Shown here: positions 241 to 59,840 of the stretch, one piece after another | Layout: each line of letters begins with the position of its first letter | Numbering within the stretch: the stretch's first letter is position 1 | Origin: Phyllobates terribilis | Lineage: Eukaryota | Assembly (NCBI RefSeq): GCF_046119375.1 | Contig: NW_027362764.1 | Span: 772,644,001-772,708,000 of the forward strand | Direction: 5' to 3' | Length of the DNA: 64,000 bases | Notes under the pieces: model-generated | Seen by the model: the letters and a program-made list of their open reading frames with translations, nothing else | Databases searched by the model: none | Told to the model about the DNA's origin: nothing | Made by a program: the position numbers and the translations under genes

Positions 241-597
241 CTGCACGGTAATGACCCCTATGTTGCTTTTAGTGCAGAATATGTGTTACAGAGAGTCAGG
301 TGAGCAAGATCTCCTGTCTGTGTGTGCTGTGTATGGGAGACATCATAACAGCCAGTCTCTACCTACTAGCTCAGAGACGACTGATAATTAAAGCTAGTGC
401 GGGTGTAATAGCGTTGTGTTAGTGGGTACTATCAGAGGAGTGGACTGACACCTTTTGCAGATCTGTCATACTGATGGGTTTTCTTAAAGGTAAAGAAAGG
501 AAAATGATGACAAGGTGCAATGCAAACCTCACTGTGCCGCAACATACATTATATTGATGTATTATACCGATATACAGGAGGTTTATTTCTTACTTAC

Positions 598-639
598 TGT
601 CCCGGCCGTCCCCGGTACACCAGGAGGACCAACCGATCC
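598..639 (-). CDS. col22a1: Collagen exon, 42 nt (GSVGPPGVPGTAGT), ending a triple-helical segment
   Basis: ctccttag|GGA...ACA|gtaagt; 14 codons ending in G-T, matching the helix interruption in recalled human GEAGPAGPPGLPGT-TSLF. Confidence 0.85.
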
Positions 640-1005
640 CTAAGGAGCAATGCACAACAGGTCAGTTAATAAAAAGCCGTTTTTATTTTGTAATGTTATT
701 TTTCCTTTAATTATGAGATAACAGATCAACAATAACTCCGTGAAATTGAACCACCAGGTGCCAAACTATCAAGATTTTGAATTTTTTTTGGATTATTGGA
801 CTTGACTGATAGTCAAGAAAATCCAACAGTCTGGAATCACAATGTTCCCCAGGATCAGACAGAACAGAACTTATTGCTAATCGCGTACGACGACGAAGGA
901 GAGGGAGGAATCGATTAATAGTGAATAAGGAGGGGAAAAAGGGAAAACCAATCAGATTATTATAAAAGCGACGTGACACCGACCTCTGCAGTCCTATGTA
1001 AATAC

Positions 1006-1059
1006 CTTATCTCCTTTATCTCCCTTAGGTCCTAACGGCCCGGGAATGCCGCTCTGGCC
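1006..1059 (-). CDS. col22a1: Collagen exon, 54 nt (GQSGIPGPLGPKGDKGDK)
   Basis: ttttaaag|GGC...AAG|gtattt; six Gly-X-Y triplets; aligns to recalled human GEKGELGLPGLKGDRGEK. Confidence 0.87.
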
Positions 1060-1574
1060 CTTTAAAAGTAAAATGGAAATGCATTAGATGTAAGTATCTG
1101 TTCACACATCCAGTTGTTATCTCAGTTGTTGGGATCTTAAAATGATAAATAAAACATTCCAGTACAGGATCCATTCATTTTAATGGGAGCAGAAGCATCT
1201 TGTCTTCAGTTTTGCCTTCTTTCCCGCGATCTATTTTTTTTAGCTGGGTCTGTTGTCTGCGCAACTTTTGTCCGTCCGAAAAAAAAAGGATCCGTATTTA
1301 TAACAATGAAGTCTGCAGCAAACAGATGCGCCATGTCATCCATTATTTCCATTATTAACGGATCCCGTTTTTATCACAGTTCATGTCCAGAATAGTAGAA
1401 GCGCTCAGAGACGAACGCAAAAAATGCAAGTAAAAATGCATCCGAAATGCCCGTACAAATGTGTCAAAAAACGTGCAGAATTTTTACTGCGAGTGTTTTT
1501 TAGTGCAGACAAATCTGATGCAAATTCTCAGTACTGCTGTATAGTGTCCTCCATGCTGTTGCTTTCTCCTAAGT

Positions 1575-2212
1575 ATTTATCTCACCCAGAGCTGGATTCA
1601 CAGCTACACTACTAAACACTCATGCATAATGTTCTACTTTCTGCTACTTTCTGGTAAGTGTTTATCTCACCAAAAATCATCATTCACAGCTACACTAATA
1701 AATAACCATGCATAATGTTTTCCTTCCTGCTAGTGTTTACATTACCCAGAGTGGGATTCACAGCTACACTACTAAATAATCATGCATAATGGTCTCCTTG
1801 CTGCTACTTTCTAGTAAGTGTTTCTGACCCAGAGCTGAATTCACAGCTACACTACTAAATATTTATGCATAATATTCTCCTTCTTGCTACTTTCTAGCAA
1901 GTGTTTATCTCACCCACAGTGGGATTCACAGCTACACTACTAAACACTCATGCATAATGTTCTACTTTCTGCTACTTTCTAGTAAGTGTTTATCTCACCA
2001 AAATCTGGATTCACAGCTACACTAATAATTAACCATGCATAATGTTTTCCTTTCTGCTACTTTCTAGTAAGTGTTTATCTCACCCAGAGCTGGATTCACA
2101 GCAACACTAATAAATAATCATGCATAATGTTCTCCTTGCTGCTACTTTCTAGCAAGTGTTTATCTCACTCAGAGCTGGATTCACAGCTAAAAAAGTAAAT
2201 ACTTATGCATAA
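1575..2212. repeat. ~85-bp tandem array, left part (about 7.5 units)
   Basis: The cagc of the (ca)cagctacact marker falls at 1601, 1687, 1761, 1844, 1929, 2014, 2099, 2184. Confidence 0.9.
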
Positions 2213-5200
2213 CTAGATGGTGGCCCGATTCTAATGCATCGGGTATTCTAGAATAGGTATGCGGCCGACCGGGTGCAATCAGCAGAGCTGTGTTTAAATT
2301 TGGGGCCAAAATCGCTGATTGGTCGCGTTCGGCAACCGCGACCAATCAGCAAAGCGGTGTTTAAATTTGGCGGCAATATCGATGATTGGTCGCGGGCGGC
2401 GGCCGCGACCAATCAGCGAACCGTGTTAGTGAGGACTGGAGAGCATGTTTAAATTTGGCACCAAAACCGCTAATTAGTCGCGACCAATCAGCAGAGCGGT
2501 GTTTAAATTTGGCGCCAATACTGCTGACTGGTCGCGGCCGCCGACCGCGACCAATCAGCAGAGCGATGTAGAGCGGGGTTTAAATTTGGCGCCAAAATTG
2601 CTGATTGGTCGCCAGCCGCGACCAAACAGCAGAGCGTTGTTTAAATTTGGCGCCAAAATCGCTGATTGGTCGAGGCCGGCGACCGCGACCAATCAGCAGA
2701 GCGTTGTTTAAATTTGGCGCCAATCTCGCTGATTGGTCGCGGATGGCGGCCGCGACCAATCAGCAGTGCGGTGTTTAAATTTGGCACCAAAATCGCTGAT
2801 TAGTCGCGACCGCGACCAATCAGCAGAGCGGTGTTTAAATTTGGCACAAAAAGCGCAGATTGGTCGCGGCCGGTGGTTGCGACCAATCAGCAGAGTGAGG
2901 TTTACATTTGGCGCCAATACTGCTGATTGGTCACGGCCGACAACCGCGACTAAACAGCAGAGCGGTGTTTAAATTTGGTGCCAATCTCGCTGATTGTTCG
3001 CGGCTGGCGGCCGCGACCAATCAGCAGACCAGGGTTTAAATTTGGCACCAATAATGCTGATGGGTCGCAGCCGGCGACCGCGACCAATCAGCAGAGCGGG
3101 GTTTACATTTGGCGCCAATACTGCTGACTGGTCACGGCCGACAGCCGCGACCAATCAGCAGAGCGGTGTTTAAATTTTGTGCCAATACTGCTGATTGATC
3201 TCTGCCAGCGACCGCGATCAATCAGCAGAGCGTTGCTTAAATTTGGCGCCAATCTCGTTGATTGGTCGCGGCTGGAGTCCGCAACCAATCAGCAGAGCGT
3301 TGTTTAAATTTGGCGCCAATATCGCTGATTGGACGCGTCCGGCGTCCGCGTCCAATCAGCACAGCAGTTTTTAAATGTGGCGGCAAGATCGGTGATTGGT
3401 CGCGGCCGCTATTTAAATGTGGCGCCCAAATCGGTGATTGGTTGCGGGCAGCGGCCGCGACCAATCAGCAGAGCGGTGTTTAACTTTAGCGCCAAGATCA
3501 CTGATTGGTCGGGTGTGGAGAGCGCGACCAATCAGCAAATCGTATTGGTGAGGAGCGGGGAGCGGAATCGTATTAGTGAGGACCGGGGAGCGCCGCTGCC
3601 TGTGCGGATACTTCCGCTGCGAGAACCCGGGACATGAGCGGGCGCTCGGAGCAGAAGTATCCCGACCCGCAGCGCCGCTCCCCGGTCCTCCCTTCACACC
3701 CTAGCCGCTGATGTCCCCACAGTATCCGCATGGTGTTACAAAGGTCCGGACATTTGTGTTAAAAATCGCTGATTGGTAGCTGGCGCTGCTCGCGACCAAT
3801 CACCGATTTGGGCGCCAAATTTAAATATCGGCCGCGACCAATCACCGATCTTGGCTCCACATTTAAACACCGCTGTGCTGATTGGTCGCCGACGCTGGGC
3901 GCGACCAATCACCGATCTTGGCGGCAAATTCAAACACCGCTGTGCTGATTGGTCGCCGACGCTGTGGCCGAACAATCACCGATTTTGGCGGCACATTTAA
4001 ATAGCATCCGCGACCAATCAGTACAGCGGTGTTTAAATGTGGAGCCAAGATCGGTGATTGGTCGCGGCCGATATTTAAATTTGGCGCCCAAATCGGTGAT
4101 TGGTCGCGGGCAGCGCCAGCGACCAATCAGCGATTTTTAACACAAATGTCAGGACCTTTGTAACACCATGCGGATACTGTGGGGACATCAGCGGCTAGGG
4201 TGTGAAGGGAGGACCGAGGAGCAGCGCTGTGGGTCGGGATACTTCTGCTGCGAGCGCTCGCTCATGTCCCGGGTTCTCGGAGCGGAAGTATCCGCACAGG
4301 CAGCTGCGCTGACATCCATGCGGCTAGGGCGTGAAGGGAGGACCGGGGAGCGGCGCTGACATCCAATTGGTCGAGGCCGCTATTTGAATGTGGCGCCCAA
4401 ATCGGTGATTGGTCGCGGGCAGCGTCCGCGACCAATCAGCACCGTAGTGTTTAACTTTTGTGGCAAGATCCGTGATTGGTCGTGGGCCAAGACCGCGACC
4501 AATCACCGATTTGTGTGGCACTTTTAAATAGCGTCCGCGACCAATTGGATGTCAGCGCCGCTCCCCGGTCCTCCCTTCACGCCCTAGCCGCATGGATGTC
4601 AGCGGCGCTGCTTGTGCGGATACTTCCGCTCCGAGCACCCGGGACATGAGCGGGCGCTCGCAGCAGAAGTATCCCGACCTGCAGCGCCGCTCCCCGGTCC
4701 TCCCTTCACACCCTAGCCGCTGATCTCCCCACAGTATCCGCATGGTGTTACAAAGCTCCGGACATTTGTGTTAAAAATCGCTGATTGGTCGCTGGCGCTG
4801 CCCGCGACCAATCACCGATTTGGGCGCCAAGTTTAAATATCGGCCGCGACCAATCACCGATCTTGGCTCCACATTTAAACACCGCTGTACTGATTGTTCG
4901 CGGCCGATATTTAAATTTGGCGCCCAAATAGGTGATTGGTCGCGGGCAGCGCCAGCGACCAATCAGCGATTTTTAACACAAATTTCCGGACCTTTGTAAC
5001 ACCATGCGGATACTGTGGGGACATCAGCGGCTAGGGTGTGAAGGGAGGATCGGGGAGCGGCGCTGCGGGTCGGGATACTTCTGCTGCGGGCGCCCGCTCA
5101 TGTCCCGGGTTCTTGCAGCGGAAGTATCCGCACAGGCAGCGACGCTGACATCCAATTGGTCGCGGACGCTATTTAAAATTGCCGCACAAATCGGTGATTG

Positions 5201-6031
5201 GTCGCTGTCTTGGCCCGCGACCAATGACTGATCTTGGCGCCAAAGTTAAACACTATTGTGCTGATTGGTCGCGGACGCTGACCGCGACCAATCACCGATT
5301 TGGGCGCCAAATTTAAATATCGGCCGCGACCAATCACCGATTTGGGCGCCAAATTTAAATATCGGCCGCGACCAATCACCGATCTTGGCTCCACATTTAA
5401 ACACCGCTGTGGTGATTGGTCGCGGCCGATATTTAAATTTGGCGCCCAAATCGGTGATTGGTCGCGGGCAGCGTCGGCGACCAATCAGCACAGCGGTGTT
5501 TAAGCTTTGCGCTAAGATCAGTGATTGGTCGGGTCCGAAGACCGCGACCAATCATCGAATCGTCTTGGTGAGGACTGGGGAGAGCGCTGCCAGTGCGGCT
5601 ACTTACGCTGCGAGAACCCGGGACATCGCGGGCGCTCGCAGGAGAAGTATCCCGACCCGCAGCGCTGGTCCCCGGTCCTCCCTTCCGCATGGAGGTCAGC
5701 GGCGCCGGCGGTCCTTCCGCTGCTACCGGCCGGGAGATGAGCGCCTCGCGCCGCTCATCTCCCGGCTGCATCTCAGTCCCGCAGATGGGTCCGGCGGTCG
5801 GGTTCCTTCTGCTGTTGCCGGCCGGGAGATGAGCGCCTCGCGCCGGTCATCTCCCGGCTGCATCGCCGCTCAGCTCCGTCCCGCAGATGAGCCGCTAACG
5901 GCCGCCATCTTTTTTTAGAAATCCCCCGGCGCTGATTGGCCGCTGCCGGACCAATGAGCGACGCTGGATTTCCTGGACAGACAGACACACAGACAGACAG
6001 ACAGACGGGATAAGACGATTATATATATAGA
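2213..6031 (-). mobile_element. Non-autonomous Helitron (3819 bp), no RepHel ORF
   Basis: Minus strand starts TCTATATATATAATCG (6031) and ends CTAG (2213). Hairpin cccgat-8nt-atcggg (2224-2243) lies 11 nt from the 3' end. Inserted between A and T with no TSD: the flanks rejoin as gcataa|tgttctcc, the host repeat sequence. (GACA)n tract near the 5' end at about 5976-6006. Confidence 0.92.
2275..3540. repeat. 67-bp GC/CpG-rich tandem repeat inside the Helitron; each unit has a 13-bp inverted repeat (gcgaccaatcagc / gctgattggtcgc)
   Basis: ttaaatttgg at 2641, 2708, 2775 (period 67); roughly 19 units. Degenerate units of both orientations continue to about 5560. Confidence 0.9.
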
Positions 6032-6655
6032 TGTTCTCCTTTCTGCTACTTTCTAGTAAGTTTTTAGCTCACGCAGAGTGGGATTCACAGCTACACTAAT
6101 AAATATTCATGCATAATATTCTCCTTGCTGCTACTTTCTAGTAAGTGTTCATCTCACCCAGAGTGGGATTCACAGCTACAATAATAATCATGTATAATGC
6201 TCTTGCTGCTACTTTCTAGTAAGTGTTTATCTCACCCAGAGCTGGAATCACAGCTATACTACTAAGTACGCATGTATAATGGTCTCCTTGCTGCTACTTT
6301 CTAGCGTTTCTCACCCAGAGCTGGATTCACAGCTACACTACTAAATACTTATGCATAATGTTCTCCTACTAATAATGATAATAAAACTACTTCTATTACT
6401 ATTATAAAAATACATAATAATATAATAATAAAAAAGGTGTATTTTTTTACAGTGAGCATTTTTAGTGCAGACAAGTCTGATGCAAATTCTCAGTACTACT
6501 GTATAGTGTCCTTGATGCTGTTGCTTTCTGCTAAGCATTTATCTAACCAAGAGCCGGATTCACAGCTACTCTACTAAACACTCATGCATAACTTTCTCCT
6601 TTCTGTTACTTTCTAGTAAGTGTTTAGCTCACCCAGAGCTGGATTCACAGATACA
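6032..6655. repeat. ~85-bp tandem array, right part (continues after the Helitron, interrupted at about 6363-6530)
   Basis: Same unit resumes exactly at tgttctcctttctgctactttctagtaag. Confidence 0.88.
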
Positions 6656-7536: not shown

Positions 7537-7668
7537 NNNNNNNNNNNNNNNNNNNNNNNNNNNNNNNNNNNNNNNNNNNNNNNNNNNNNNNNNNNNNNNN
7601 NNNNNNNNNNNNNNNNNNNNNNNNNNNNNNNNNNNNNNNNNNNNNNNNNNNNNNNNNNNNNNNNNNNN
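7537..7668. other. Assembly gap (132 N)
   Basis: Run of N; the true size is unknown. Confidence 1.
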
Positions 7669-9888: not shown

Positions 9889-10852
9889 AGTATATAGAGG
9901 AGTCACATCTATCTCATTCATACAGCAGTATATATAGAGGAGTCACATCTACCCCATCCATAGAGCAGTATATATAGAGGAGTCACATCTACCCCATCCA
10001 TAGAGCAGTATGTATAGAGGAGTCACATCTACCCCATCCATAGAGCAGTATGCATAGAGGAGTCAGATCTACCCCACCCATAGAGCAGTATGTATAGAGG
10101 AGTCACATCTACCCCATCCATAGAGCAGTATGTATAGAGGAGTCACATCTACCCCATCCATGCAGCAGTATATATAGAGGAGTCACATCTATCCCATCCA
10201 TAGAGCAGTATGTATAGAGGAGTCACATCTACCCCATCCATACAGCAGTATGTATAGAGGAGTCACATCTACCCCACCCATAGAGCAGTATGTATAGAGG
10301 AGTCACATCTACGACATCCATAGATCAGTATGTATAGAGGAGTCACATCTATCCCATCCATAGAGAAGTAGGTATAGAGGAGTCACATCTATCCCATCCA
10401 TAGAGCAGTATGTATAGAGGAGTCACATCTACCCCATCCATAGTGCAGTATGTATAGAGGAGTCACATCTACCCCATCCATACAGCAGTATATATAGAGG
10501 AGTCACATCTATCCCATCCATAGAGAAGTATGTATAGAGGAGTCACATCTATCCCATCCATAGAGAAGTATGTATAGAGGAGTCCCATCTGTCCCATCCA
10601 TAGAGCAGTATGTATAGAGGAGTCACATCTACCCCATCCATAGTGCAGCATGTATAGAGGAGTCACATCTATCCCATCCATAGAGCAGTATGTATAGAGG
10701 AGTCACATCTATCCCATCCATAGAGCAGTATGTATAGAGGAGTCACATCTATCCCATCCATAGAGCAGTATATATAGAGGAATCACATCTACCTCATCCA
10801 TACAGCAGTATGTATAGAGGAGTCACATCTATCCCATCCATAGTGCAGTATA
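9889..10852. repeat. 40-bp minisatellite, left arm (about 24 units)
   Basis: Unit tagagcagtatgtatagaggagtcacatctaccccatcca, period 40. Confidence 0.95.
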
Positions 10853-12301: not shown

Positions 12302-15300
12302 ATCTATTCTGAAAACTGAATTGTACCTCCATGCTTCTTGCAATGCTCTGCAGCCTATCATTGGTAAATCTTTGTCATTCATCTACTACGTGTTATCTAT
12401 TCTGAAAACTGAATTGTACCTCCATGCTTCTTGCAATGCTCTGCAGCCTATCATTGGTCATTCATCTACGTCGTTTAACCCATGATACTTTAAGGTCATC
12501 ACACTTACTTTCACAATTTATGATCCATGTAGACTTGCCAATCTGTTTTTTGTTCTGCAGTTTATGGTCTCCTGTTGTCTTAAACTAGCTGATTGATTGC
12601 TAACGAGTTAAATCTGTGTAGATCTAAGCAGATACTTCCCTATATATTGAGACATAGTCAAGGGGCAGCATTTATGCGGGGGCATTTATGCATATAGCAT
12701 TTATGCATACTTTATCGAAGTGCCATAATTTATCAAAGTGTCTCGGCAGTTAGATATGGCAGTTGGACAGGGCAGGAGACAGGAAAGACATGCAAGACAA
12801 TTAAACAAACTTGCTTCCAGTCCATCAGTTTTGCAAACAGTACTCACCATTTGTATCTGTGCCATTTATATTCTGGCTGCAACAATCATCCACATTCACC
12901 GTTCGCCCACAAATTCAGCAGACTTCATCCATATTAACCCCTCTCTCCTCTCTTCTCCTATGTACAGCTGACATGCTCTCTTCACAATGTTATACCACAC
13001 AGATCCATTCATTGCCACCATACAACACAGGAAACGCTCTCACAAATCACTCAACCATCTGCTCACTCTCTGTATCTTCCTTCTCTTAGTCGCAGGTGAT
13101 ATTTCTCCTAATCCAGGACCCTCCAGTAATAATAACACTAACTCTTTCCCTGTTACATTCAGAAACCCTGCTAATCTCATTAATATTCCCTGCATATCTT
13201 CTGTCTCATTCAACTGTGCCCTTTGGAATGCGCGCTCAGCATGTAATAAACTCTCTTACATCCATGACTTTTCCCTCTCTAATTCCCTCAACCTTCTGGC
13301 TCTCACTGAAACCTGGATCCAGCAGTCGGACACCACCACCGCTCCAGCTCTCTCCTATGGTGGCCTACACTTCTCTCATACTCCGAGACCTGACAACAGA
13401 TCAGGTGGAGGTGTTGGTCTGCTTCTTTCAACAAAATGTACTTTTCAGGTGATCCCGCCAGTACCCTCCCTTATCTTCCCTTCTTTTGAGGCCCACACAG
13501 TCAGACTCTACCGGCCCTTCTCCCTGCGAGTGGCCGTTGTCTATCGCCCTCCAGGTCCCTCCCGTCAGTTCCTGGATCACTTTGCTGCCTGGCTTCCAAA
13601 TTTTCTATCCTGCGACATCCCCACGATAATCATGGGAGATTTTAACATCCCAATTGGTGAGTCTCTTTCCCCATCTGCTGCTCACCTTTTATCACTAACC
13701 TCCTCCTTCGGCCTTTCACAGCTTGCTAATTCTCCTACACATGAGGACGGGAACACATTGGACCTGATCTTCTCCCGGCTTTGCTCAGTACATGACTTTA
13801 CTAACTCTCCCATTCCACTGTCTGACCATAATCTTCTTTCATTCTCTGTCAAGAACTGTGACTCTACTCTAGACCCCTCCACTTTCCACACTTATAGAAA
13901 TTTACGCGCCATTAACACCCAGAAATTGATGAAAAAGTTGCACTCATCATTGGTCCCAATCTCTTCCCTCTCATGTCCCAACTCTGCATTGAAGCATTAT
14001 AACGATATAATGCTATGCGTTGTGGATGAAGCCGCACCTCCTACACAAAGAACAATTTGGCATAGACGGCGACAACCCTGGCACACGCCTCAAACACGTC
14101 TTCTCCAGCGGTGTTCCAGGTGCGCTGAAAGGCTGTGGAGAAAATCTAATCTGCCCAACGATTTCCTCCATTATAAATTTATGCTGAAAACATATAACTC
14201 TGCCCTTCACCTCTCCAAACAAACCTACTTTAACAACCTCATAATCTCACTTTCCAATAATCCTAAACGACTCTGTGACACGGTTCATTCTCTCCACAAT
14301 CAAACACAGGCCCCGACCACCGACCTCAGCGCTGACAATCTGGCCAATTATTTCAAAGAAAAAATTGACCATATACGACAGGAAATTTTCTCCCAATCCC
14401 CAAACGTTTTGCATGCTCTCCCCCACCACATTGTATCTTGCTCACTTTCTGACTTCAAACCAGTCACGGAAGATGAAGTGATCAGGCTCCTTGCATCTTC
14501 TCGCCCTACCACCTGCACCAGTGACCCTATTCCCTCACATCTCCTTCAGTCCCTTGCTCCAGCTGTCACCACTCACCTAACTAAAATTTTCAACCTCTCC
14601 CTCTCATCTGGTATCTTTCCCTCTTCTTTTAAACATGCCAGCATACATCCATTACTTAAAAAAAAATCCCTTGACCAGAACTGCACGACCAACTACAGAC
14701 CGGTCTCTAATCTTCCCTTTATCTCTAAACTCCTGGAACGCCTGGTCCATTCCCGTCTAATCCGCTATCTTTCAGACAACGCTCTTCTTGACCCTTTACA
14801 ATCTGGTTTCCGCTCTTTACATTCTACTGAAACTGCCCTCACTAAAGTTTCTAATGATCTACTAACAGCTAAATCTAATGGTCACTACTCCCTGCTGATT
14901 CTCCTGGATCTCTCTGCAGCATTCGACACTGTGGATCACCAGCTCCTCCTCACTATGCTCTGCTCTATTGGCCTCAAGGACACTGTTCTCCCCTGGTTCT
15001 CCTCCTATCTCTCTGACCGCTCCTTCTCTGTGTCTTTCGCCGGCTCCTCCTCCTCTCTCCTTCCCCTTACTGTCGGGGTTCCTCAAGGATCAGTCCTAGG
15101 CCCCCTTCTTTTCTCCTTATACACCGCTCCTATTGGACAAACAATCAGCAGATTCAGTTTTCAGTACCATCTCTATGCTGATGACACCCAATTATACACC
15201 TCTGCTCCGGACATCACCCCTGCATTACTACAAAAGACCAGTGATTGTCTTTCTGCTGTGTCTAACAATATGTCCTCCCTCTGCCTAAAACTGAATCTGT

Positions 15301-16384
15301 CAAAAACTGAACTACTCGTATTTCCTCCCTCCACTAACCTACCTGTGCCCGATATTGGCATTTCCGTTTGTGGCTCAACCATTACTCCCCAGCAACAAGC
15401 CCGCTGTCTTGGGGTCATTTTTGACTCCGATCTTTCTTTTACTCCTCACATCAAATCACTCGCTCGTTCATGTCATCTACACCTCAAAAACATCTCAAGA
15501 ATCAGGACTTTTCTCACCTTTGACTCGGCAAAAACTCTTACTGTAACTCTTATTCATTCTCGTCTTGACTATTGCAACTCTCTACTTATCGGGCTCCCTC
15601 TTACTAAACTCTCCCCTCTCCAATCCATCCTTAATGCAGCAGCCAGGATCATATTCCTCGCCAACCGCTACTCCGATGCCTCTTCCCTGTGCCAGTCATT
15701 GCATTGGTTACCCATCCAATATAGAATTCAATTTAAACTTATCACGCTCACCCACAAAGCGCTCCATGCTTCAGCACCCCCCTACATCTCCTCCCTTGTC
15801 TCAGTCTACCACCCTACATGTGCCCTCCGTTCTGCCAATAACTTAAAACTAAAATCCTCCATAATCCGAACTTCTCACTCCCATCTCCAAGATTTCTCAC
15901 GTTCTGCGCCAATTCTTTGGAATGCACTACCCAAGACAGTTCGATTAATTCACAATACCCACAGTTTCAAGCGGACCCTAAAAACCCATTTCTTTAGACT
16001 GGCGTATCACCTAAACACACAATCTGTCCATCCCAGTTGTCCGTCCCAGTTTTCCCCCATATTAAATTCTTCTTCAATTTCAGGTTCATACCAACCGTGC
16101 ACATAATAGCCTCGGTCAGGACTGCACACATACTGGCAGGCGACCAGTCCATGTATTATTTATCCTATATAGTATATCAAGGCTGCATTATACAATATAT
16201 GTACATTTTACCTTTTGTGTCTCCCCAATCTCCTCATAGACTGTAAGCTTGCGAGCAGGACCCTCACTCCTTTCGATATGAGATATGCTTATTCTGTATT
16301 GTCTGTATATGTCCCCCCTAAAACTTGTAAATTGCTGCGGAATATGTTGGCGCTATAAAAGTAAACATTATTATTATTATTATT
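12302..16384 (+). mobile_element. L2-clade non-LTR retrotransposon (about 4.1 kb) with (TTA)n tail and 7-bp TSD
   Basis: ACCCCCT at 12295-12301 and 16385-16391; (tta)n tail at 16367-16384; 3' ggaatatgttggcgcta motif; contains the EN-RT ORF. Confidence 0.93.
12987..16106 (+). CDS. LINE ORF2-type protein: APE endonuclease plus reverse transcriptase (1039 aa), with N-terminal 2A-like motif
   Basis: APE motifs WNARS, LTETW, GGGVG, VYRPPG, GDFN, TLDL, SDH; RT motifs [31 protein letters not shown]; L2-type C-terminus [15 protein letters not shown]. No stop or frameshift in the ORF track. Confidence 0.95.
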
Positions 16385-16577: not shown

Positions 16578-18235
16578 TATATAGAAGAGTCACATCTATC
16601 TCACCCATTGAGCAGTATGTATAGAGGAGTCACATCTATCCCATCCATAGAGCAGTATGTATAGAAGAGTCACATCTACCCCATCCATAGATCAGTATGT
16701 ATAGAGGAGTCACATCTATCCCATCTATAGAGCAGTATGTATAGAGGAGTCACATCTATCCCATCCATAGAGCAGTATGTATAGAGGAGTCACATCTATC
16801 CCATCCATAGTGTAGTATATATAGAAGAGTCACACCTATCTCACCCATTGAGCAGTATGTATAGAGGAGTCACATCTATCTCATCCATAGAGCAGTATGT
16901 ATAGAGGAGTCACATATATCCCATCCATAGAGCAGTATATATAGAGGAATCACATCTACCTCACCCATACAGCAGTATGTATAAAGGAGTCACATCTATC
17001 CCATTCATAGAGCAGAATGTATAGAGGAGTCACATCTATCCCATCCAAAGAGCAATATGTATAGAAGAATCACATCTATCTCATCCATAGAGCAGTATGT
17101 ATGGAGGAATCACATCTATTCCATCCATAGAGCAGTATGTATAGAGGAGTCACATCTACCCCATCCATAGAGCAGTATATATAGAAGAGTCACATCTATC
17201 TCATACATAGAGCAGTATGTATAGAGGAGTCACATCTATCCCATCCATAAAGCAGTATGTATAGAAGAGTCACATGTATCTCATCAATAGAGCAGTATGT
17301 ATAGAGGAGTCACATCTATCCCATCCATAGAGCAGTATGTATAGAGGAGTCACATGTATCTCATCAATAGAGCAGTATGTATAGAAGAGTCACATCTATC
17401 CCATCCATAGAGCAGTATGTATAGAGGAGTCACATGTATCTCATCAATAGAGCAGTATGTATAGAGGAGTCACATCTATCCCATCCATAGAGCAGTATGT
17501 ATAGAGGAGTCACATGTATCTCATCAATAGAGCAGTATGTATAGAGGAGTCACATCTATCCCATCCGTAGAGCAGTATATATAGAAGAGTCACATCTATC
17601 CCATCCATAGAGCAGTATGTATAGAGGAGTCACATGTATCTCATCAATAGAGCAGTATGTATAGAGGAGTCACATGTATCTCATCAATAGAGGAGTATGT
17701 ATAGAGGAGTCACATCTATCCCATCCGTAGAGCAGTATATATAGAGGAGTCACATCTATCCCATCCGTAGAGCAGTATATATAGAGGAGTCACATCTATA
17801 CCATCCATAGAGCAGTACGCATAGAAGAATCACATCTATCCCATCCATAGAGCAGTATGTATAGAGGAGTCACATCTATCCCATCCATAGAGCAGTATGT
17901 ATAGAAGAATCACATCTATCTCATCCATAGAGCAGTATGTATAGAGGAGTCACATCTACCCCATCCATGCAGCAGTATATATAGAGGAGTCACATCTATA
18001 CCATCCATAGAGCAGAATGTATAGAGGAGTCACATCTATCCCATCCATAGAGCAGTATATATAGAGGAGTCACATCTACCCCATCCATAGATCAGTATGT
18101 ATAGAGGAGTCACATCTATCCCATCCATAGAGCAGTATGTATAGAATAGTCACATCTATCCCATCCATAGAGCAGTATGTATAGAGGAGTCACATCTATC
18201 CCATCCATAGAGAAGTATCATCTATAGAGCAGTAT
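16578..18235. repeat. 40-bp minisatellite, right arm (about 41 units)
   Basis: Same 40-bp unit resumes after the Tc1 TA; adds variants such as catgtatctcatcaatag. Confidence 0.95.
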
Positions 18236-56841: not shown

Positions 56842-56930
56842 CTAAAATAAAGGTTGGTGTAGGTCACATTGTTACAGACTAGAATTATGTTATATTAAGG
56901 ACAAAAGTCATAAAATCAGCAGCATCACAT

Positions 56931-59817
56931 GGAGGAGCATCACTGCAGACACTTGCTTATTATCCATTATATGTAGCTCACCACTAGGGGGAGCATCACG
57001 GCAGACACTTACTTATTATCCATTCTATGTAGCTCACCACTAGGGGGAGCATCACTGCAGACACTTACTTATTATCCATTCTATGTAGCACACCACTAGG
57101 GGGAGCATCACTGCAGACACTCGCTTATTATCCATTCTATGTAGCCCACCACTGGAGGAGCATCACTGCAGACACTTACTCATTATCCATTCTATGTAGC
57201 CCACCACTGGAGGAGCATCACTGCAGACACTTGCTTATTATCCATTATATGTAGCTCACCACTAGGGGGAGCATCACTGCAGACACTTACTTATTATCCA
57301 TTCTATGTAGCACACCACTAGGGGGAGCATCACTGCAGACACTCGCTTATTATCCATTCTATGTAGCCCACCACTGGAGGAGCATCACTGCAGACACTTA
57401 CTCATTATCCATTCTATGTAGCTCACCACTGGAGGAGCATCACTGCAGACACTTACTCATTATCCATTCTATGTAGCCCACCACTGGAGGAGCATCACTG
57501 CAGACACTTGCTTATTATCCATTATATGTAGCCCACCACTAGGAGGAGCATCACTGCAGACACTCGCTTATTATCCATTCTATGTAGCTCACCACTAGGG
57601 GAGCATCACTGCAGACACTTGCTTATCATCCATTCTATGTAGCCCACCACTGGAGGAGCATCACTGCAGACACTTGCTTATTATCAATTCTATGTAGCTC
57701 ACCACTAGGGGAAGCATCACTGCAGACACTTGCTTATTATCAATTCTATGCAGCCCACCACTGGAGGAGCATCACTGCAGACACTTGCTTATTATCCATT
57801 ATATGTAGCCCACCAGTAGGAAGAGCATCACTGCAGACACTTGCTTATCATCCATTCTATGTAGCCCATCACTGGGAGAGCATCACTGCAGGCACTTACT
57901 TATTATCCATTCTATGTAGCCCACTTCTAGGAGGAGCATCACTGCAGACACTAACTTATTATCCATTCTATGTAGCCCACCACTGGAGGAGCATCACTGC
58001 AGACACTTGCTTATTATCCATTCTAAGTAGCTCACCACTAGGGGAAGCATCACTGCAGACACTTATTATCCATTCTATGTAGCCCACCACTGGGGGACCA
58101 TCACTGCAGACACTTACTTATTATCCATTCTATGTAGCCCACTTCTAGGAGGAGCATCACTGCAGACACTAACTTATTATCCATTCTATGTAGCCCACCA
58201 CTAGGGGAAGCATCACTGCAGACACTTATTATCCATTCTATGGAGCTCACCACTAGGGGAAGCATCACTGCAGACACTTATTTATTATCCATTCTATGTA
58301 GCCCACTTCTAGGAGGAGCATCACTGCAGACACTAACTTATTATCCATTCTATGTAGCCCACCACTGGAGGAGCATCACTGCAGACACTTGCTTATTATC
58401 CATTCTAAGTAGCTCACCACTAGGGGAAGCATCACTGCAGACACTTATTATCCATTCTATGTAGCCCACCACTGGGGGACCATCACTGCAGACACTTACT
58501 TATTATCCATTCTATGTAGCCCACTTCTAGGGGGAGCATCACTGCAGACACTTACTTATTATCCATTCTATGTAGCCCACCACTGGAGGAGCATCACTGC
58601 AGACACTTGCTTATTATCAATTCTATGGAGCTCACCACTAGGGGAAGCATCACTGCAGACACTTATTTATTATCCATTCTATGTAGCCCATCACTAGGGA
58701 GAGCATCACTGCAGACACTAGCTTATTATCAATTCTATGCAGCCCACTTCTAGGGGGAGCATCACTGCAGATACTTACTTATTATCCATTCTATGTAGCC
58801 CACCACTGGAGGAGCATCACTGCAGACACTTGCTTATTATCCATTCTAAGTAGCTCACCACTAGGGGAAGCATCACTGCAGACACTTGCTTATTATCCAT
58901 TCTATGTAGCCCACCACTGGGGGATCATCACTGCAGACACTTACTTATTATCCATTCTATGCAGCCCACTTCTAGGGGGAGTATTACTGCAGACACTTAC
59001 TTATTATCCATTCTATGTAGCCCACCACTCGAGGAGCATCACTGCAGACACTTGCTTATTATCAATTCTATGTAGCTCACCACTAGGGGAAGCATCACTG
59101 CAGACACTTACTTATTATCCATTCTATGCAGCCCACCACTCGAGGAGCATCACTGCAGACACTTGCTTATTATCAATTCTATGTAGCTCACCACTAGGGG
59201 AAGCATCACTGCAGACACTTATTTATTATCCATTCTATGTAGTCCATCACTAGGGAGAGCATCACTGCAGACACTTGCTTATTATCAATTCTATGCAGCC
59301 CACTTCTAGGGGGAGCATCACTGCAGACACTTATTATCCATTCTATGTAGCCCACCACTGGAGGAGCATCACTGCAGACACTTGCTTATTATCCATTCCA
59401 TGTAGCTCACCACTAGGGGAAGCATCACTGCAGACACTTGCTTATTATCCATTCTATGTAGCTCACCACTAGGGGAAGCATCACTGCAGACACTTACTTA
59501 TTATCCATTCTATGCAGCCCACTTCTAGGGGGAGCATCACTGCAGACACTTTCTTATTATCCATTCTATGCAGCCCACCACTGGAGGAGCATCACTGCAG
59601 ACACTTACTTATTATCCATTCTATGTAGCCCACCACTAGGGGGAGCATCACTGCAGACACTTACTTATTATCCATTCTATGTAGCTCACCACTGGGGGAC
59701 CATCACTGCAGACACTTACTTATTATCCATTCTATGTAGCCCACCACTAGGGGGAGCATCACTGCAGACACTTACTTATTATCCATTCTATGCAGCCCAC
59801 TTCTAGGGGGAGCATAC
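56931..59817. repeat. 56-bp minisatellite (about 51 units; some 52-bp variants)
   Basis: gcagacactt at 57001 and 57057; unit ggagcatcactgcagacacttacttattatccattctatgtagctcaccactaggg. Confidence 0.95.
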
Positions 59818-59840
59818 TGCATAAAAGTTTATACAACTAG

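What the first reader, a model, noticed from the sequence alone, without database searches (positions are those of the whole stretch)
2275..3540. Helitron carries a tandem array that reads like a cell-cycle promoter module (NF-Y CCAAT x2 + palindromic E2F site + CHR)
Seen: each 67-bp unit has two opposed CCAATCAG boxes. Many units have TTTGGCGCCAA, with perfect 12-bp palindromes TTTGGCGCCAAA at 2585-2596 and 2646-2657. On the minus strand, the Helitron's own orientation, this reads GGCGC-CAAA-TTTAAA: a GC box, a 4-nt spacer and a TTTAAA hexamer. Established: CCAAT boxes combined with E2F/CDE sites followed after 4 nt by a CHR (TTTGAA or TTTAAA) are the architecture of vertebrate cell-cycle promoters bound by NF-Y and DREAM/MuvB. 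Inference: this CpG-rich array of about 19 modules could be a cell-cycle-gated promoter/enhancer, or a replication-coupling device for a rolling-circle element, which would spread E2F/NF-Y/CHR modules across the genome. I am not aware of this being described for Helitrons, but could not search.
Basis: partly seen in the sequence, partly recalled or inferred. Interest (0 to 1): 0.8.

Follow-up and report, generated by a model that had tools for sequence, protein, structure and literature searches.

The report
Helitron minisatellite of CCAAT-box hairpins
A rolling-circle transposon (Helitron) in a frog genome carries 19 tandem 67-bp units that read like pieces of a cell-cycle promoter, but in this copy they are decaying repeats of a hairpin that a very abundant transposon family spreads, and no regulatory activity is shown.

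Summary
Window 2213-6031 is a complete non-autonomous Helitron on the minus strand: TC...CTAG ends, a 3' hairpin, inserted between A and T of an 85-bp satellite with no target duplication. Near its 3' end it carries 19 units of 67 bp (2273-3559).

The consensus unit has strong NF-Y-type CCAATCAG boxes on both strands, TTTGGCGC (E2F-like) and TTTAAA (CHR-like) in CDE-N4-CHR geometry. The literature confirms that grammar.

- The two "opposed CCAAT boxes" are the arms of one 15-bp-stem hairpin. It is homologous to a single palindrome in the Helitron's own 5' region.
- Only 3 of 19 units keep the whole grammar, and only 2 carry the perfect E2F palindrome.
- Motif columns vary half as much as the others, but this is not significant.
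- One compensatory arm change keeps the hairpin while destroying both CCAAT boxes.
- The element is CpG-island-like (CpG o/e 1.2-1.3 against 0.2-0.5 around it). The family is very abundant and occurs under three species labels.
- No RNA, binding or methylation data could be obtained.

Best reading: a Helitron-borne hairpin minisatellite with promoter-like content. Cell-cycle gating is untested. The scan had already found this family on other DNA of this genome, and one follow-up (s1-234818) reached the same reading.

The parts
2213..6031 (-). Complete non-autonomous Helitron, 3,819 bp, no RepHel gene
   Evidence: 5' TC and 3' CTAG ends. Insertion between A and T of an 85-bp satellite unit with no target duplication; the rejoined flanks equal the satellite consensus. 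74 family contigs diverge from the window at 2212/2213. No ORF over 217 aa and no Pfam hit.
2213..2262 (-). Helitron 3' terminus: subterminal hairpin CCCGAT..ATCGGG followed by CCACCATCTAG
   Evidence: Read directly. DNA fold -6.4 kcal/mol, z -2.7.
2273..3559 (.). 67-bp minisatellite of 19 units (the finding). Each unit is a 37-nt hairpin palindrome whose 15-nt arms hold CCAATCAG/CTGATTGG, plus a 30-nt linker holding TTTAAATTTGGCGCC
   Evidence: TRF; segmentation and consensus; unit alignment; hairpin folds at z -3.8 to -5.0; motif census; mean pairwise unit identity 82.5% and no higher-order period.
2585..2596 (.). Perfect palindrome TTTGGCGCCAAA (double E2F-like site)
   Evidence: Exact match.
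2646..2657 (.). Second perfect palindrome TTTGGCGCCAAA
   Evidence: Exact match.
3560..5700 (.). Interior of nested inverted blocks. A roughly 200-bp GC-rich segment alternates with variant units (42-bp and 67-bp subtypes) in both orientations
   Evidence: Inverted repeats of 250-495 nt at 92-96%; unit HMM hits on both strands.
5701..6031 (-). Helitron 5' region: TC + TA-rich start, (GTCT)n microsatellite, one ATTGG..CCAAT palindrome, a YY1-like box and GC-rich hairpin repeats. Promoter-like in composition
   Evidence: Read directly; CpG o/e 1.11, GC 63%.
5932..5955 (.). Single CTGATTGG...CCAAT palindrome in the 5' region, homologous to the array hairpin
   Evidence: Local alignment score 30 against 18.2 +/- 2.5 (2 of 300 shuffles reach it). 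Second scoring scheme: 16 against 8.2 +/- 1.5 (0 of 500). Folds as an imperfect hairpin, z -1.9.
5901..5911 (-). AAGATGGCGGC on the Helitron strand, matching the YY1 consensus as I recall it (not tested)
   Evidence: Read directly. The motif assignment comes from memory.
1732..2212 (.). 85-bp satellite, left part of the target
   Evidence: TRF.
6032..6367 (.). 85-bp satellite, right part of the target
   Evidence: TRF; sequence.

Best explanation
This is a Helitron-borne hairpin minisatellite.

Shown: a very abundant non-autonomous Helitron family carries, 60 bp inside its 3' end, an array of 67-bp units. Each unit is a 37-nt palindrome (15-bp stem, 7-nt loop) plus a 30-nt AT-cored linker. The palindrome arms are strong NF-Y-type CCAAT sites and are homologous to a single CCAAT palindrome in the element's own promoter-like 5' region.

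Inferred: the array arose by tandem duplication of that 5' module (or of a promoter piece captured with it). It grew by slippage or unequal exchange favoured by the hairpins, and it is copied around the genome passively by rolling-circle transposition. The promoter-like motif content is inherited from that origin. At this locus, inside CpG-poor satellite DNA, the units are decaying and probably do nothing for the host. Unmethylated copies probably can bind NF-Y; that too is inferred.
For: - Element borders and empty site.
- 74 different flanks at 2212/2213, and 45,806 contigs of one DNA run laid on the element.
- The two opposed boxes are one hairpin: dG -13 to -18 kcal/mol, z -3.8 to -5.0, 0 of 200 shuffles as good.
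- Homology to the 5' palindrome: 2 of 300 and 0 of 500 shuffles reach the score.
- Variability follows the hairpin anatomy, not only the motif cores: whole 15-nt arms 5.8%, loop 25%, linker 11%.
- Two compensatory arm changes among 35 changes (P = 0.04). One of them (GATTGATC/GATCAATC) keeps pairing while destroying both CCAAT boxes.
- Motifs are eroding in this copy. 3 of 19 units are complete. At 2304, 2528, 2997 and 3106 the majority of laid contigs carries the canonical motif letter where this copy is mutated, and at 3128 a minority does.
- 8 of 18 well-supported private differences are CpG losses.
- The neighbourhood is satellite DNA with a LINE, not a promoter.
- Helitrons and Helentrons that carry internal minisatellites are documented, including in frogs (PMC12001565; PMC7492417).
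Against: - The consensus unit fits a specific published promoter grammar better than 19,999 of 20,000 shuffles.
- Motif columns do vary less (6.2% against 12.6%), and TTTAAA/TTTGAA persists across all unit subtypes.
- The whole element keeps CpG o/e 1.2-1.3 although its units are only 82.5% alike. CpG transitions run only about 3 times the rate of other transitions. This would fit germline hypomethylation, as at bound CpG islands, as well as youth.
- Homology to the 5' region covers the palindrome only, not the linker.
Confidence: 0.6

Rival explanations
1. The array is a working NF-Y-dependent promoter or enhancer platform of the Helitron family, for example driving RepHel in master copies. 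Through E2F and CDE/CHR sites it may be gated to proliferating cells, and transposition seeds such modules across the genome.
For: - The consensus matches CCAAT + CDE-N4-CHR, and TTTAAA is a functional CHR (PMC4176359; PMC4889920).
- CCAATCAG is optimal for NF-Y (PMC12065363).
- Box spacings of 24 and 31 bp exceed the 19-bp minimum for double NF-Y binding.
- CpG-island-like composition.
- The 5' region also looks like a CCAAT promoter with a YY1-like box.
- Other TE families with arrays of CCAAT boxes are bound by NF-Y.
- An unchecked note reports the array upstream of RepHel.
Against: - No expression, binding or methylation data.
- In this element the array lies at the 3' end, not upstream of anything the element encodes.
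- Only 5 of 19 units keep CDE-N4-CHR and 2 keep the E2F palindrome.
- The E2F core is lost in one unit subtype.
- The conservation test is not significant.
- A compensatory change sacrifices both CCAAT boxes to keep the hairpin.
- CHR sites act at or very near a TSS, and no TSS is known here.
- The third CCAAT lies 12 bp from the ATTGG, too close for joint binding.
Confidence: 0.2
2. The hairpins themselves are the functional part. On the single-stranded transposition intermediate, or at replication forks, the array folds into a row of stem-loops. These could help rolling-circle transposition (pausing, termination, protection) or bind single-strand or Y-box (cold-shock-domain) proteins. On this view the CCAAT reading is secondary.
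For: - Strong predicted DNA hairpins in every unit.
- Whole arms, not only the CCAAT pentamers, are the best-kept columns, and the loop is the worst kept.
- Compensatory arm changes, P = 0.04.
- The array lies next to the 3' hairpin, which in Helraiser acts as the transposition terminator (abstract of PMC4778049).
Against: - Only two compensatory events.
- 30 of 255 stem positions are mismatched in this copy, and most arm changes are uncompensated.
- In the interior subtype the outer stem change (CTGATTGG to GTGATTGG) is not matched in the partner arm.
- Arm-to-arm conversion during repair would give the same symmetry without any function.
- There is no experimental link between internal hairpin arrays and Helitron mobility.
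Confidence: 0.1
3. The unit is a fragment of a host gene's CCAAT-rich (bidirectional or cell-cycle) promoter that the Helitron captured and then amplified. The grammar would then be real but foreign to the element.
For: - Helitrons capture and amplify host promoters, as with the NUBPL promoter in bats (PMC4224331 and PMC4778049).
- CpG-island composition of the whole cargo.
- The motif combination is typical of host promoters.
Against: - No donor locus could be searched for with the tools at hand.
- The palindrome is also present once in the 5' terminal region, which is normally the element's own sequence.
- No exon-like cargo: ORFs have no Pfam hit and no homologues.
Confidence: 0.1

Closest known systems
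Heli2Xen and other frog Helitrons with internal minisatellites (Xenopus; PMC12001565)
   Same: Canonical TC...CTAG Helitrons in frogs. Their non-autonomous copies are largely filled by a minisatellite that also occurs in the autonomous copy, and copy numbers run from hundreds to tens of thousands.
   Different: The Heli2Xen unit is 166 bp, and no promoter-like or palindromic content is reported. Here the unit is 67 bp, a CCAAT hairpin plus an E2F/CHR-like linker, and is CpG-island-like. The terminal hairpin differs from the one given for Heli1Xen1 (CCCGAT/ATCGGG here against CCCGTTA/TAACGGG). Family membership was not tested.
Helentron/Helitron satellite carriers (Cg_HINE of the Pacific oyster, PMC7492417; DINE-TR1 of Drosophila, recalled from memory)
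   Same: Non-autonomous rolling-circle elements with a central tandem array that they disperse across the genome.
   Different: Those arrays are ordinary satellite monomers with no transcription-factor grammar noted. Different Helitron clade and different hosts.
LTR12/ERV9, MER and RLTR10 elements with multiple CCAAT boxes bound by NF-Y (PMC12065363, PMC3730095)
   Same: A transposable element that carries several well-spaced optimal CCAAT(CAG) boxes per copy and spreads them. In mammals these are really bound by NF-Y and act as promoters or enhancers.
   Different: Those are retroviral LTRs. That survey's text does not mention Helitrons or DNA transposons (0 occurrences of either term). Binding is shown there and is not tested here.
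CDE/CHR plus CCAAT promoters of G2/M genes (cyclin B1/B2, CDC25C, CDK1)
   Same: Motif content and geometry of the consensus unit: CCAAT boxes, a GC-rich element 4 nt upstream of TTTAAA, and an E2F-type TTTGGCGC.
   Different: Those are single modules at a TSS, conserved across species and bound by DREAM/MuvB. Here there are 19 tandem copies with no known TSS, mostly eroded, and the CCAAT pair forms a hairpin palindrome.
Helitron promoter capture in vespertilionid bats (NUBPL promoter; PMC4224331, PMC4778049)
   Same: A Helitron family that multiplies promoter-like DNA throughout a vertebrate genome.
   Different: In bats a donor gene is identified and promoter activity and chimeric transcripts are shown. 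Here there is no donor and no transcript, and the module is tandemly amplified.

Membership tests
Canonical Helitron (Helitron1 type) | 5' TC and 3' CTRR termini | tested here: met
   Minus strand starts TCTATATATA at 6031 and ends CCACCATCTAG at 2213.
Canonical Helitron (Helitron1 type) | Insertion between A and T without target site duplication | tested here: met
   The flanks ...ATGCATAA and TGTTCTCC... rejoin to the 85-bp satellite consensus ATGCATAATGTTCTCC.
Canonical Helitron (Helitron1 type) | Subterminal 3' hairpin about 10 nt before CTRR | tested here: met
   CCCGAT-loop-ATCGGG lies 11 nt before the end.
Canonical Helitron (Helitron1 type) | Multicopy family with the same ends in different flanks | tested here: met
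   74 contigs with unlike flanks end at 2212/2213. 45,806 contigs of run X2 were laid on the stretch.
Canonical Helitron (Helitron1 type) | RepHel gene (for autonomous status) | tested here: not met
   No long ORF and no Pfam hit, so this copy is non-autonomous. Earlier notes report a RepHel-bearing relative; I did not check this.
TE-borne minisatellite (Helitron/Helentron satellite carrier) | Tandem array wholly inside the element's borders and shared by dispersed copies | tested here: met
   The array at 2273-3559 lies inside 2213-6031. Array contigs are present in runs under three species labels.
CDE/CHR cell-cycle promoter | CHR (TTTGAA, TTTAAA or TTCGAA) with a GC-rich CDE 4 nt upstream | tested here: met
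   Met in the consensus and in 5 of 19 units (GGCGC-CAAA-TTTAAA on the minus strand). Definition from PMC4176359.
CDE/CHR cell-cycle promoter | CHR located at or very near a transcription start site | not testable with these tools
   No RNA run holds the stretch. Position rule.
CDE/CHR cell-cycle promoter | CCAAT boxes upstream, spaced so that NF-Y can bind (at least 19 bp apart) | tested here: met
   Spacings are 31 bp (box 1 to box 3) and 24 bp (ATTGG to the next CCAAT). The 12-bp pair (box 3 to ATTGG) is too close.
CDE/CHR cell-cycle promoter | Motifs conserved above their surroundings | tested here: inconclusive
   Motif columns vary 6.2% against 12.6% for the rest, but 12 of 66 circular shifts do as well. 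The E2F core is lost in one subtype.
CDE/CHR cell-cycle promoter | Binding by DREAM/MuvB, E2F4 and NF-Y, and cell-cycle-dependent transcription | not testable with these tools
   Needs ChIP or CUT&RUN and reporter assays.
CpG island | Sequence criteria: over 200 bp, GC over 50%, CpG o/e over 0.6 | tested here: met
   3.8 kb, GC 57%, o/e 1.22; the array alone is 1.31.
CpG island | Unmethylated in the germline | not testable with these tools
   Indirect only. CpG transitions run about 3 times other transitions within the array, and 8 of 18 private differences are CpG losses.

The most novel reading that the evidence does not exclude
A very abundant Helitron family acts as a mobile CpG-island and NF-Y platform. 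Its arrays stay unmethylated, bind NF-Y (and perhaps E2F/DREAM through the TTTGGCGC-TTTAAA core), drive the transposase in dividing germ cells, and seed very many proliferation-linked promoter or enhancer modules through a giant frog genome. This would be a DNA-transposon counterpart of LTR12.
Probability: 0.12. Interest if true: 0.75.

Novelty: new member of a known kind. Interest (0 to 1): 0.35.

Why it matters
If the arrays were active, this would be the first Helitron family known to spread a defined cell-cycle or NF-Y promoter grammar. It would also be a large source of orphan CpG islands in a giant amphibian genome, and it could be tested directly with methylation, accessibility and NF-Y binding data.

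As things stand, it is a clear case of how a transposon's own hairpin module can expand into a minisatellite that looks like a promoter. It is also a warning that motif grammar read off one repeated unit is weak evidence of function.

Tried and rejected
- **RNA evidence.** Two run searches found no holder on record as RNA. The runs guessed as RNA look like low-coverage DNA: 1.76 million contigs in 128 Mb, longest about 17 kb. I draw nothing about expression from them.
- **Depth.** Read laying depth cannot be read as copy number or expression, as the tool itself states. I use only the number of contigs, their places and their flanks.
- **Family-wide column conservation from read laying.** Only 40 of 309 variable places are listed, so no unbiased per-column rate was possible.
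- **More copies through called ORFs.** The 102-aa ORF at the array's end found no homologue.
- **More copies in metagenome contigs.** There were 12 single pattern matches, and none hit the unit HMM, so they are chance hits.
- **Rfam.** No RNA family anywhere in the window.
- **Higher-order repeat.** None. Identity is flat at 81-83% for lags 1-8.
- **Homology of the linker (E2F/CHR part) to the 5' region.** Not detected; only the palindrome aligns.
- **Literature.** No paper links Helitrons with NF-Y/CCAAT arrays. The exact 12-mer palindrome occurs in three papers, which I did not open.
- **Other readings of the unit.** A TATA-like TTTAAA, a histone-H1-like AAACAC box and a Y-box CTGATTGG can also be read in. 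I treat them as equally post hoc and did not pursue them.
Full report
**What is there**

Window 2213-6031 is a complete Helitron on the minus strand. Read in its own sense it begins TCTATATATA at 6031. It ends with a hairpin (CCCGAT..ATCGGG) followed by CCACCATCTAG at 2213.

It sits inside an 85-bp satellite (1732-2212 and 6032-6367). The two flanks...ATGCATAA and TGTTCTCC..., rejoin into that satellite's consensus. The window therefore holds its own empty-site proof of an insertion between A and T with no target duplication.

The element has no RepHel gene. Its longest ORF is 217 aa with no Pfam hit, so it is non-autonomous.

**Abundance and spread**

When contigs of four public runs were laid on 2100-6150, one DNA run alone gave 45,806 contigs. 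Of these, 74 carried unlike flanks that break off exactly at 2212/2213. Pieces of the array and of the interior also came from runs under two other species labels, at roughly 87-99% identity. The family is therefore very abundant and shared among related species. Earlier notes of this scan call the genome a poison frog; I did not test that.

**The array**

TRF gives a 67-bp period over 2276-3408. I segment 19 units over 2273-3559, of which 14 are exactly 67 bp.

- TTTGGCGCCAAA lies at 2585 and 2646, and TTTGGCGCCAA occurs 8 times.
- The array is CpG-rich: GC 54%, CpG o/e 1.31, against 0.20-0.46 around it.
- The Helitron is indeed on the minus strand.

"Each unit has two opposed CCAATCAG boxes" is true of the consensus only. 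Exact CCAATCAG occurs 15 times and CTGATTGG 7 times within the array. My per-unit census of the 19 units gives:

| Feature | Units intact |
|---|---|
| Left CCAAT | 15 |
| Right ATTGG | 11 |
| TTTGGCGC | 8 |
| TTTAAA or TTTGAA | 14 |
| Contiguous TTTAAATTTGGCGC (CDE-N4-CHR reading) | 5 |
| Perfect E2F palindrome | 2 |
| Whole grammar | 3 |

At column 38 slightly more units read GCGCCAAT, a third CCAAT box, than GCGCCAAA.

**Anatomy of the unit**

The two opposed boxes are the arms of one palindrome. GCTGATTGGTCGCGG and CCGCGACCAATCAGC are exact complements separated by 7 nt. As single-stranded DNA a unit folds at -18 kcal/mol (z -3.8 to -4.4), and the 37-nt core at -13.1 kcal/mol (z -5.0). None of 200 shuffles folded as well.

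The remaining 30 nt are a linker with an AT core (TTTAAATTT) next to GGCGCC. The unit HMM also hits the opposite strand of every unit, which reflects this near-dyad symmetry.

**Origin**

The Helitron's 5' region holds one similar palindrome (CTGATTGG at 5932, CCAAT at 5951).
- It aligns with the array hairpin better than 298 of 300 shuffles under one scoring scheme and better than all 500 under another.
- The linker has no detectable counterpart there.
- Just downstream, in Helitron sense, lies AAGATGGCGGC. I recall this as the YY1 consensus, so the 5' region looks like a CCAAT-type CpG-island promoter. This is a resemblance from memory, not a test.

This independently reproduces the earlier follow-up on another copy (s1-234818).

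The interior (3560-5700) is made of nested inverted blocks with variant units of 42 and 67 bp.

**Is the promoter grammar real?**

- A GC-rich CDE lies 4 nt upstream of the CHR. TTTAAA is a functional CHR (Ccnb1) and binds DREAM as strongly as TTTGAA. CCAAT boxes lie upstream, and CHRs sit at or very near the TSS (PMC4176359).
- G2/M promoters work through multiple CCAAT boxes plus CDE/CHR, and two NF-Y trimers need at least 19 bp between boxes (PMC4889920).
- CAG right after CCAAT is optimal for NF-Y (PMC12065363).

The consensus unit meets these sequence rules. Its box spacings of 24 and 31 bp are permissive, while the 12-bp spacing between the third box and the ATTGG is not.

In 20,000 dinucleotide shuffles of the consensus, the whole combination arose once. 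That figure is inflated. The motif set was picked after reading the sequence, the two CCAAT boxes are one palindrome, and the tandem array provides only one independent unit.

**Conservation tests**

Within the array, the motif columns (two CCAAT pentamers, TTTAAA, TTTGGCGC) vary at 6.2% and the rest at 12.6%. However, 12 of 66 circular shifts of the column labels give at least that contrast, so the difference is not significant.

The pattern follows the hairpin anatomy instead. Whole 15-nt arms vary at 5.8%, the 7-nt loop at 25%, and there are two variable patches in the linker.

Across the older unit subtypes in the interior, the CCAAT arms and TTTAAA (twice TTTGAA) persist. The E2F core becomes TGTGGAGCC in one subtype.

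Among 17 array hairpins there are 35 arm changes, and two are compensatory pairs (expected 0.34, P = 0.04). One of them (GATTGATC with GATCAATC) keeps base pairing while destroying both CCAAT boxes. The sample is small, but it points to palindromic symmetry rather than NF-Y binding as what is maintained. Arm-to-arm conversion could equally produce it.

**State of this copy**

Units are only 82.5% alike on average, with no higher-order period.

At 2304, 2528, 2997 and 3106, places where this copy breaks a motif, most of the laid contig depth carries the canonical letter; at 3128 about a third does. The motifs therefore belong to the family consensus and are eroding here.

Of 18 well-supported private differences, 8 are CpG losses, although CpG makes up about 20% of positions. 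Within the array, CpG transitions run about three times the rate of other transitions. That is some CpG decay, but less than I would expect for heavily methylated vertebrate DNA. The last comparison rests on general knowledge.

High CpG content could mean youth or germline hypomethylation. I cannot separate the two.

The neighbourhood is satellite DNA with a LINE, not a gene promoter.

**Function**

No run is on record as RNA, and no binding or methylation data are within reach.

In this element the array lies 60 bp from the 3' end. It therefore cannot act as an upstream promoter for anything the element encodes. An unchecked note says it lies upstream of RepHel in another copy (s1-234824).

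My estimates:
- Helitron-borne hairpin minisatellite with inherited promoter-like content, inert at this locus: 0.6.
- Working NF-Y promoter or enhancer platform of the family, with or without cell-cycle gating: 0.2.
- Function of the hairpins on single-stranded DNA: 0.1.
- Captured host promoter: 0.1.

These readings partly overlap.

**Comparison with what is known**

- Frog Helitrons whose non-autonomous copies are mostly minisatellite are published (Heli2Xen, 166-bp unit; PMC12001565).
- So are oyster Helentron satellite carriers (PMC7492417) and promoter-amplifying bat Helitrons (PMC4224331 and PMC4778049).
- TE families with arrays of CCAAT boxes that NF-Y binds are known among LTR elements. 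That survey's text does not mention Helitrons or DNA transposons.
- I found no paper describing a Helitron with NF-Y/CCAAT hairpin arrays.

I therefore file it as a new member of a known kind, the Helitron satellite carrier, with unusual and testable motif content.

The scan has flagged the same family at least ten times on other DNA of this genome.

Noticed in passing
window 20604-55745: A 35-kb satellite of a 35-bp unit, about 994 copies at 91% matches. GC is 30% and CpG is almost absent (o/e 0.00-0.08).
   Followed up: partly
window 12987-16106 (+), with 9893-10851 and 16580-18218: An intact 1,039-aa LINE ORF2 (endonuclease plus reverse transcriptase, Pfam E 1e-33). It lies between two arrays of the same 40-bp repeat (24 and 41 copies), one about 2.1 kb upstream and one about 0.5 kb downstream. 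The LINE may have inserted into that satellite, or it may carry it.
   Followed up: partly
window 3560-5700: The Helitron interior is a set of nested inverted repeats (arms 250-495 nt, 92-96% complementary, some only 34 nt apart). A GC-rich segment of about 200 bp alternates with variant CCAAT units. No contig spanned it, so an assembly artefact cannot be excluded. Another note covers this stretch (s1-230177).
   Followed up: partly
window 590-650 and 1020-1075, minus strand: Two short stretches translate as collagen-type Gly-X-Y repeats (for example GPPGVPG and GIPGPLGPKGDKGDK). They are probably exons of a collagen gene, which would place the Helitron and the satellites in or just upstream of that gene.
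   Followed up: no
window 56930-59821: A 56-bp satellite (about 52 copies, 89% matches), also scored at a 111-bp period.
   Followed up: no
window 5700-5900: Two direct copies of a roughly 110-bp GC-rich segment, each holding a near-perfect palindrome (GGGAGATGAGCGCCTCGCGCCG.TCATCTCCC). They lie in the Helitron 5' region, downstream of the YY1-like box.
   Followed up: no
window 2212, contigs of run X10: In the second species label, contigs that end at the Helitron 3' terminus continue into ...CTCTATATATATAT with 0.92 agreement. This could be a (TA)n target preference, or Helitron ends abutting each other.
   Followed up: no
window 7537-7668: A run of 132 N (assembly gap or masked). Left untouched.
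   Followed up: no
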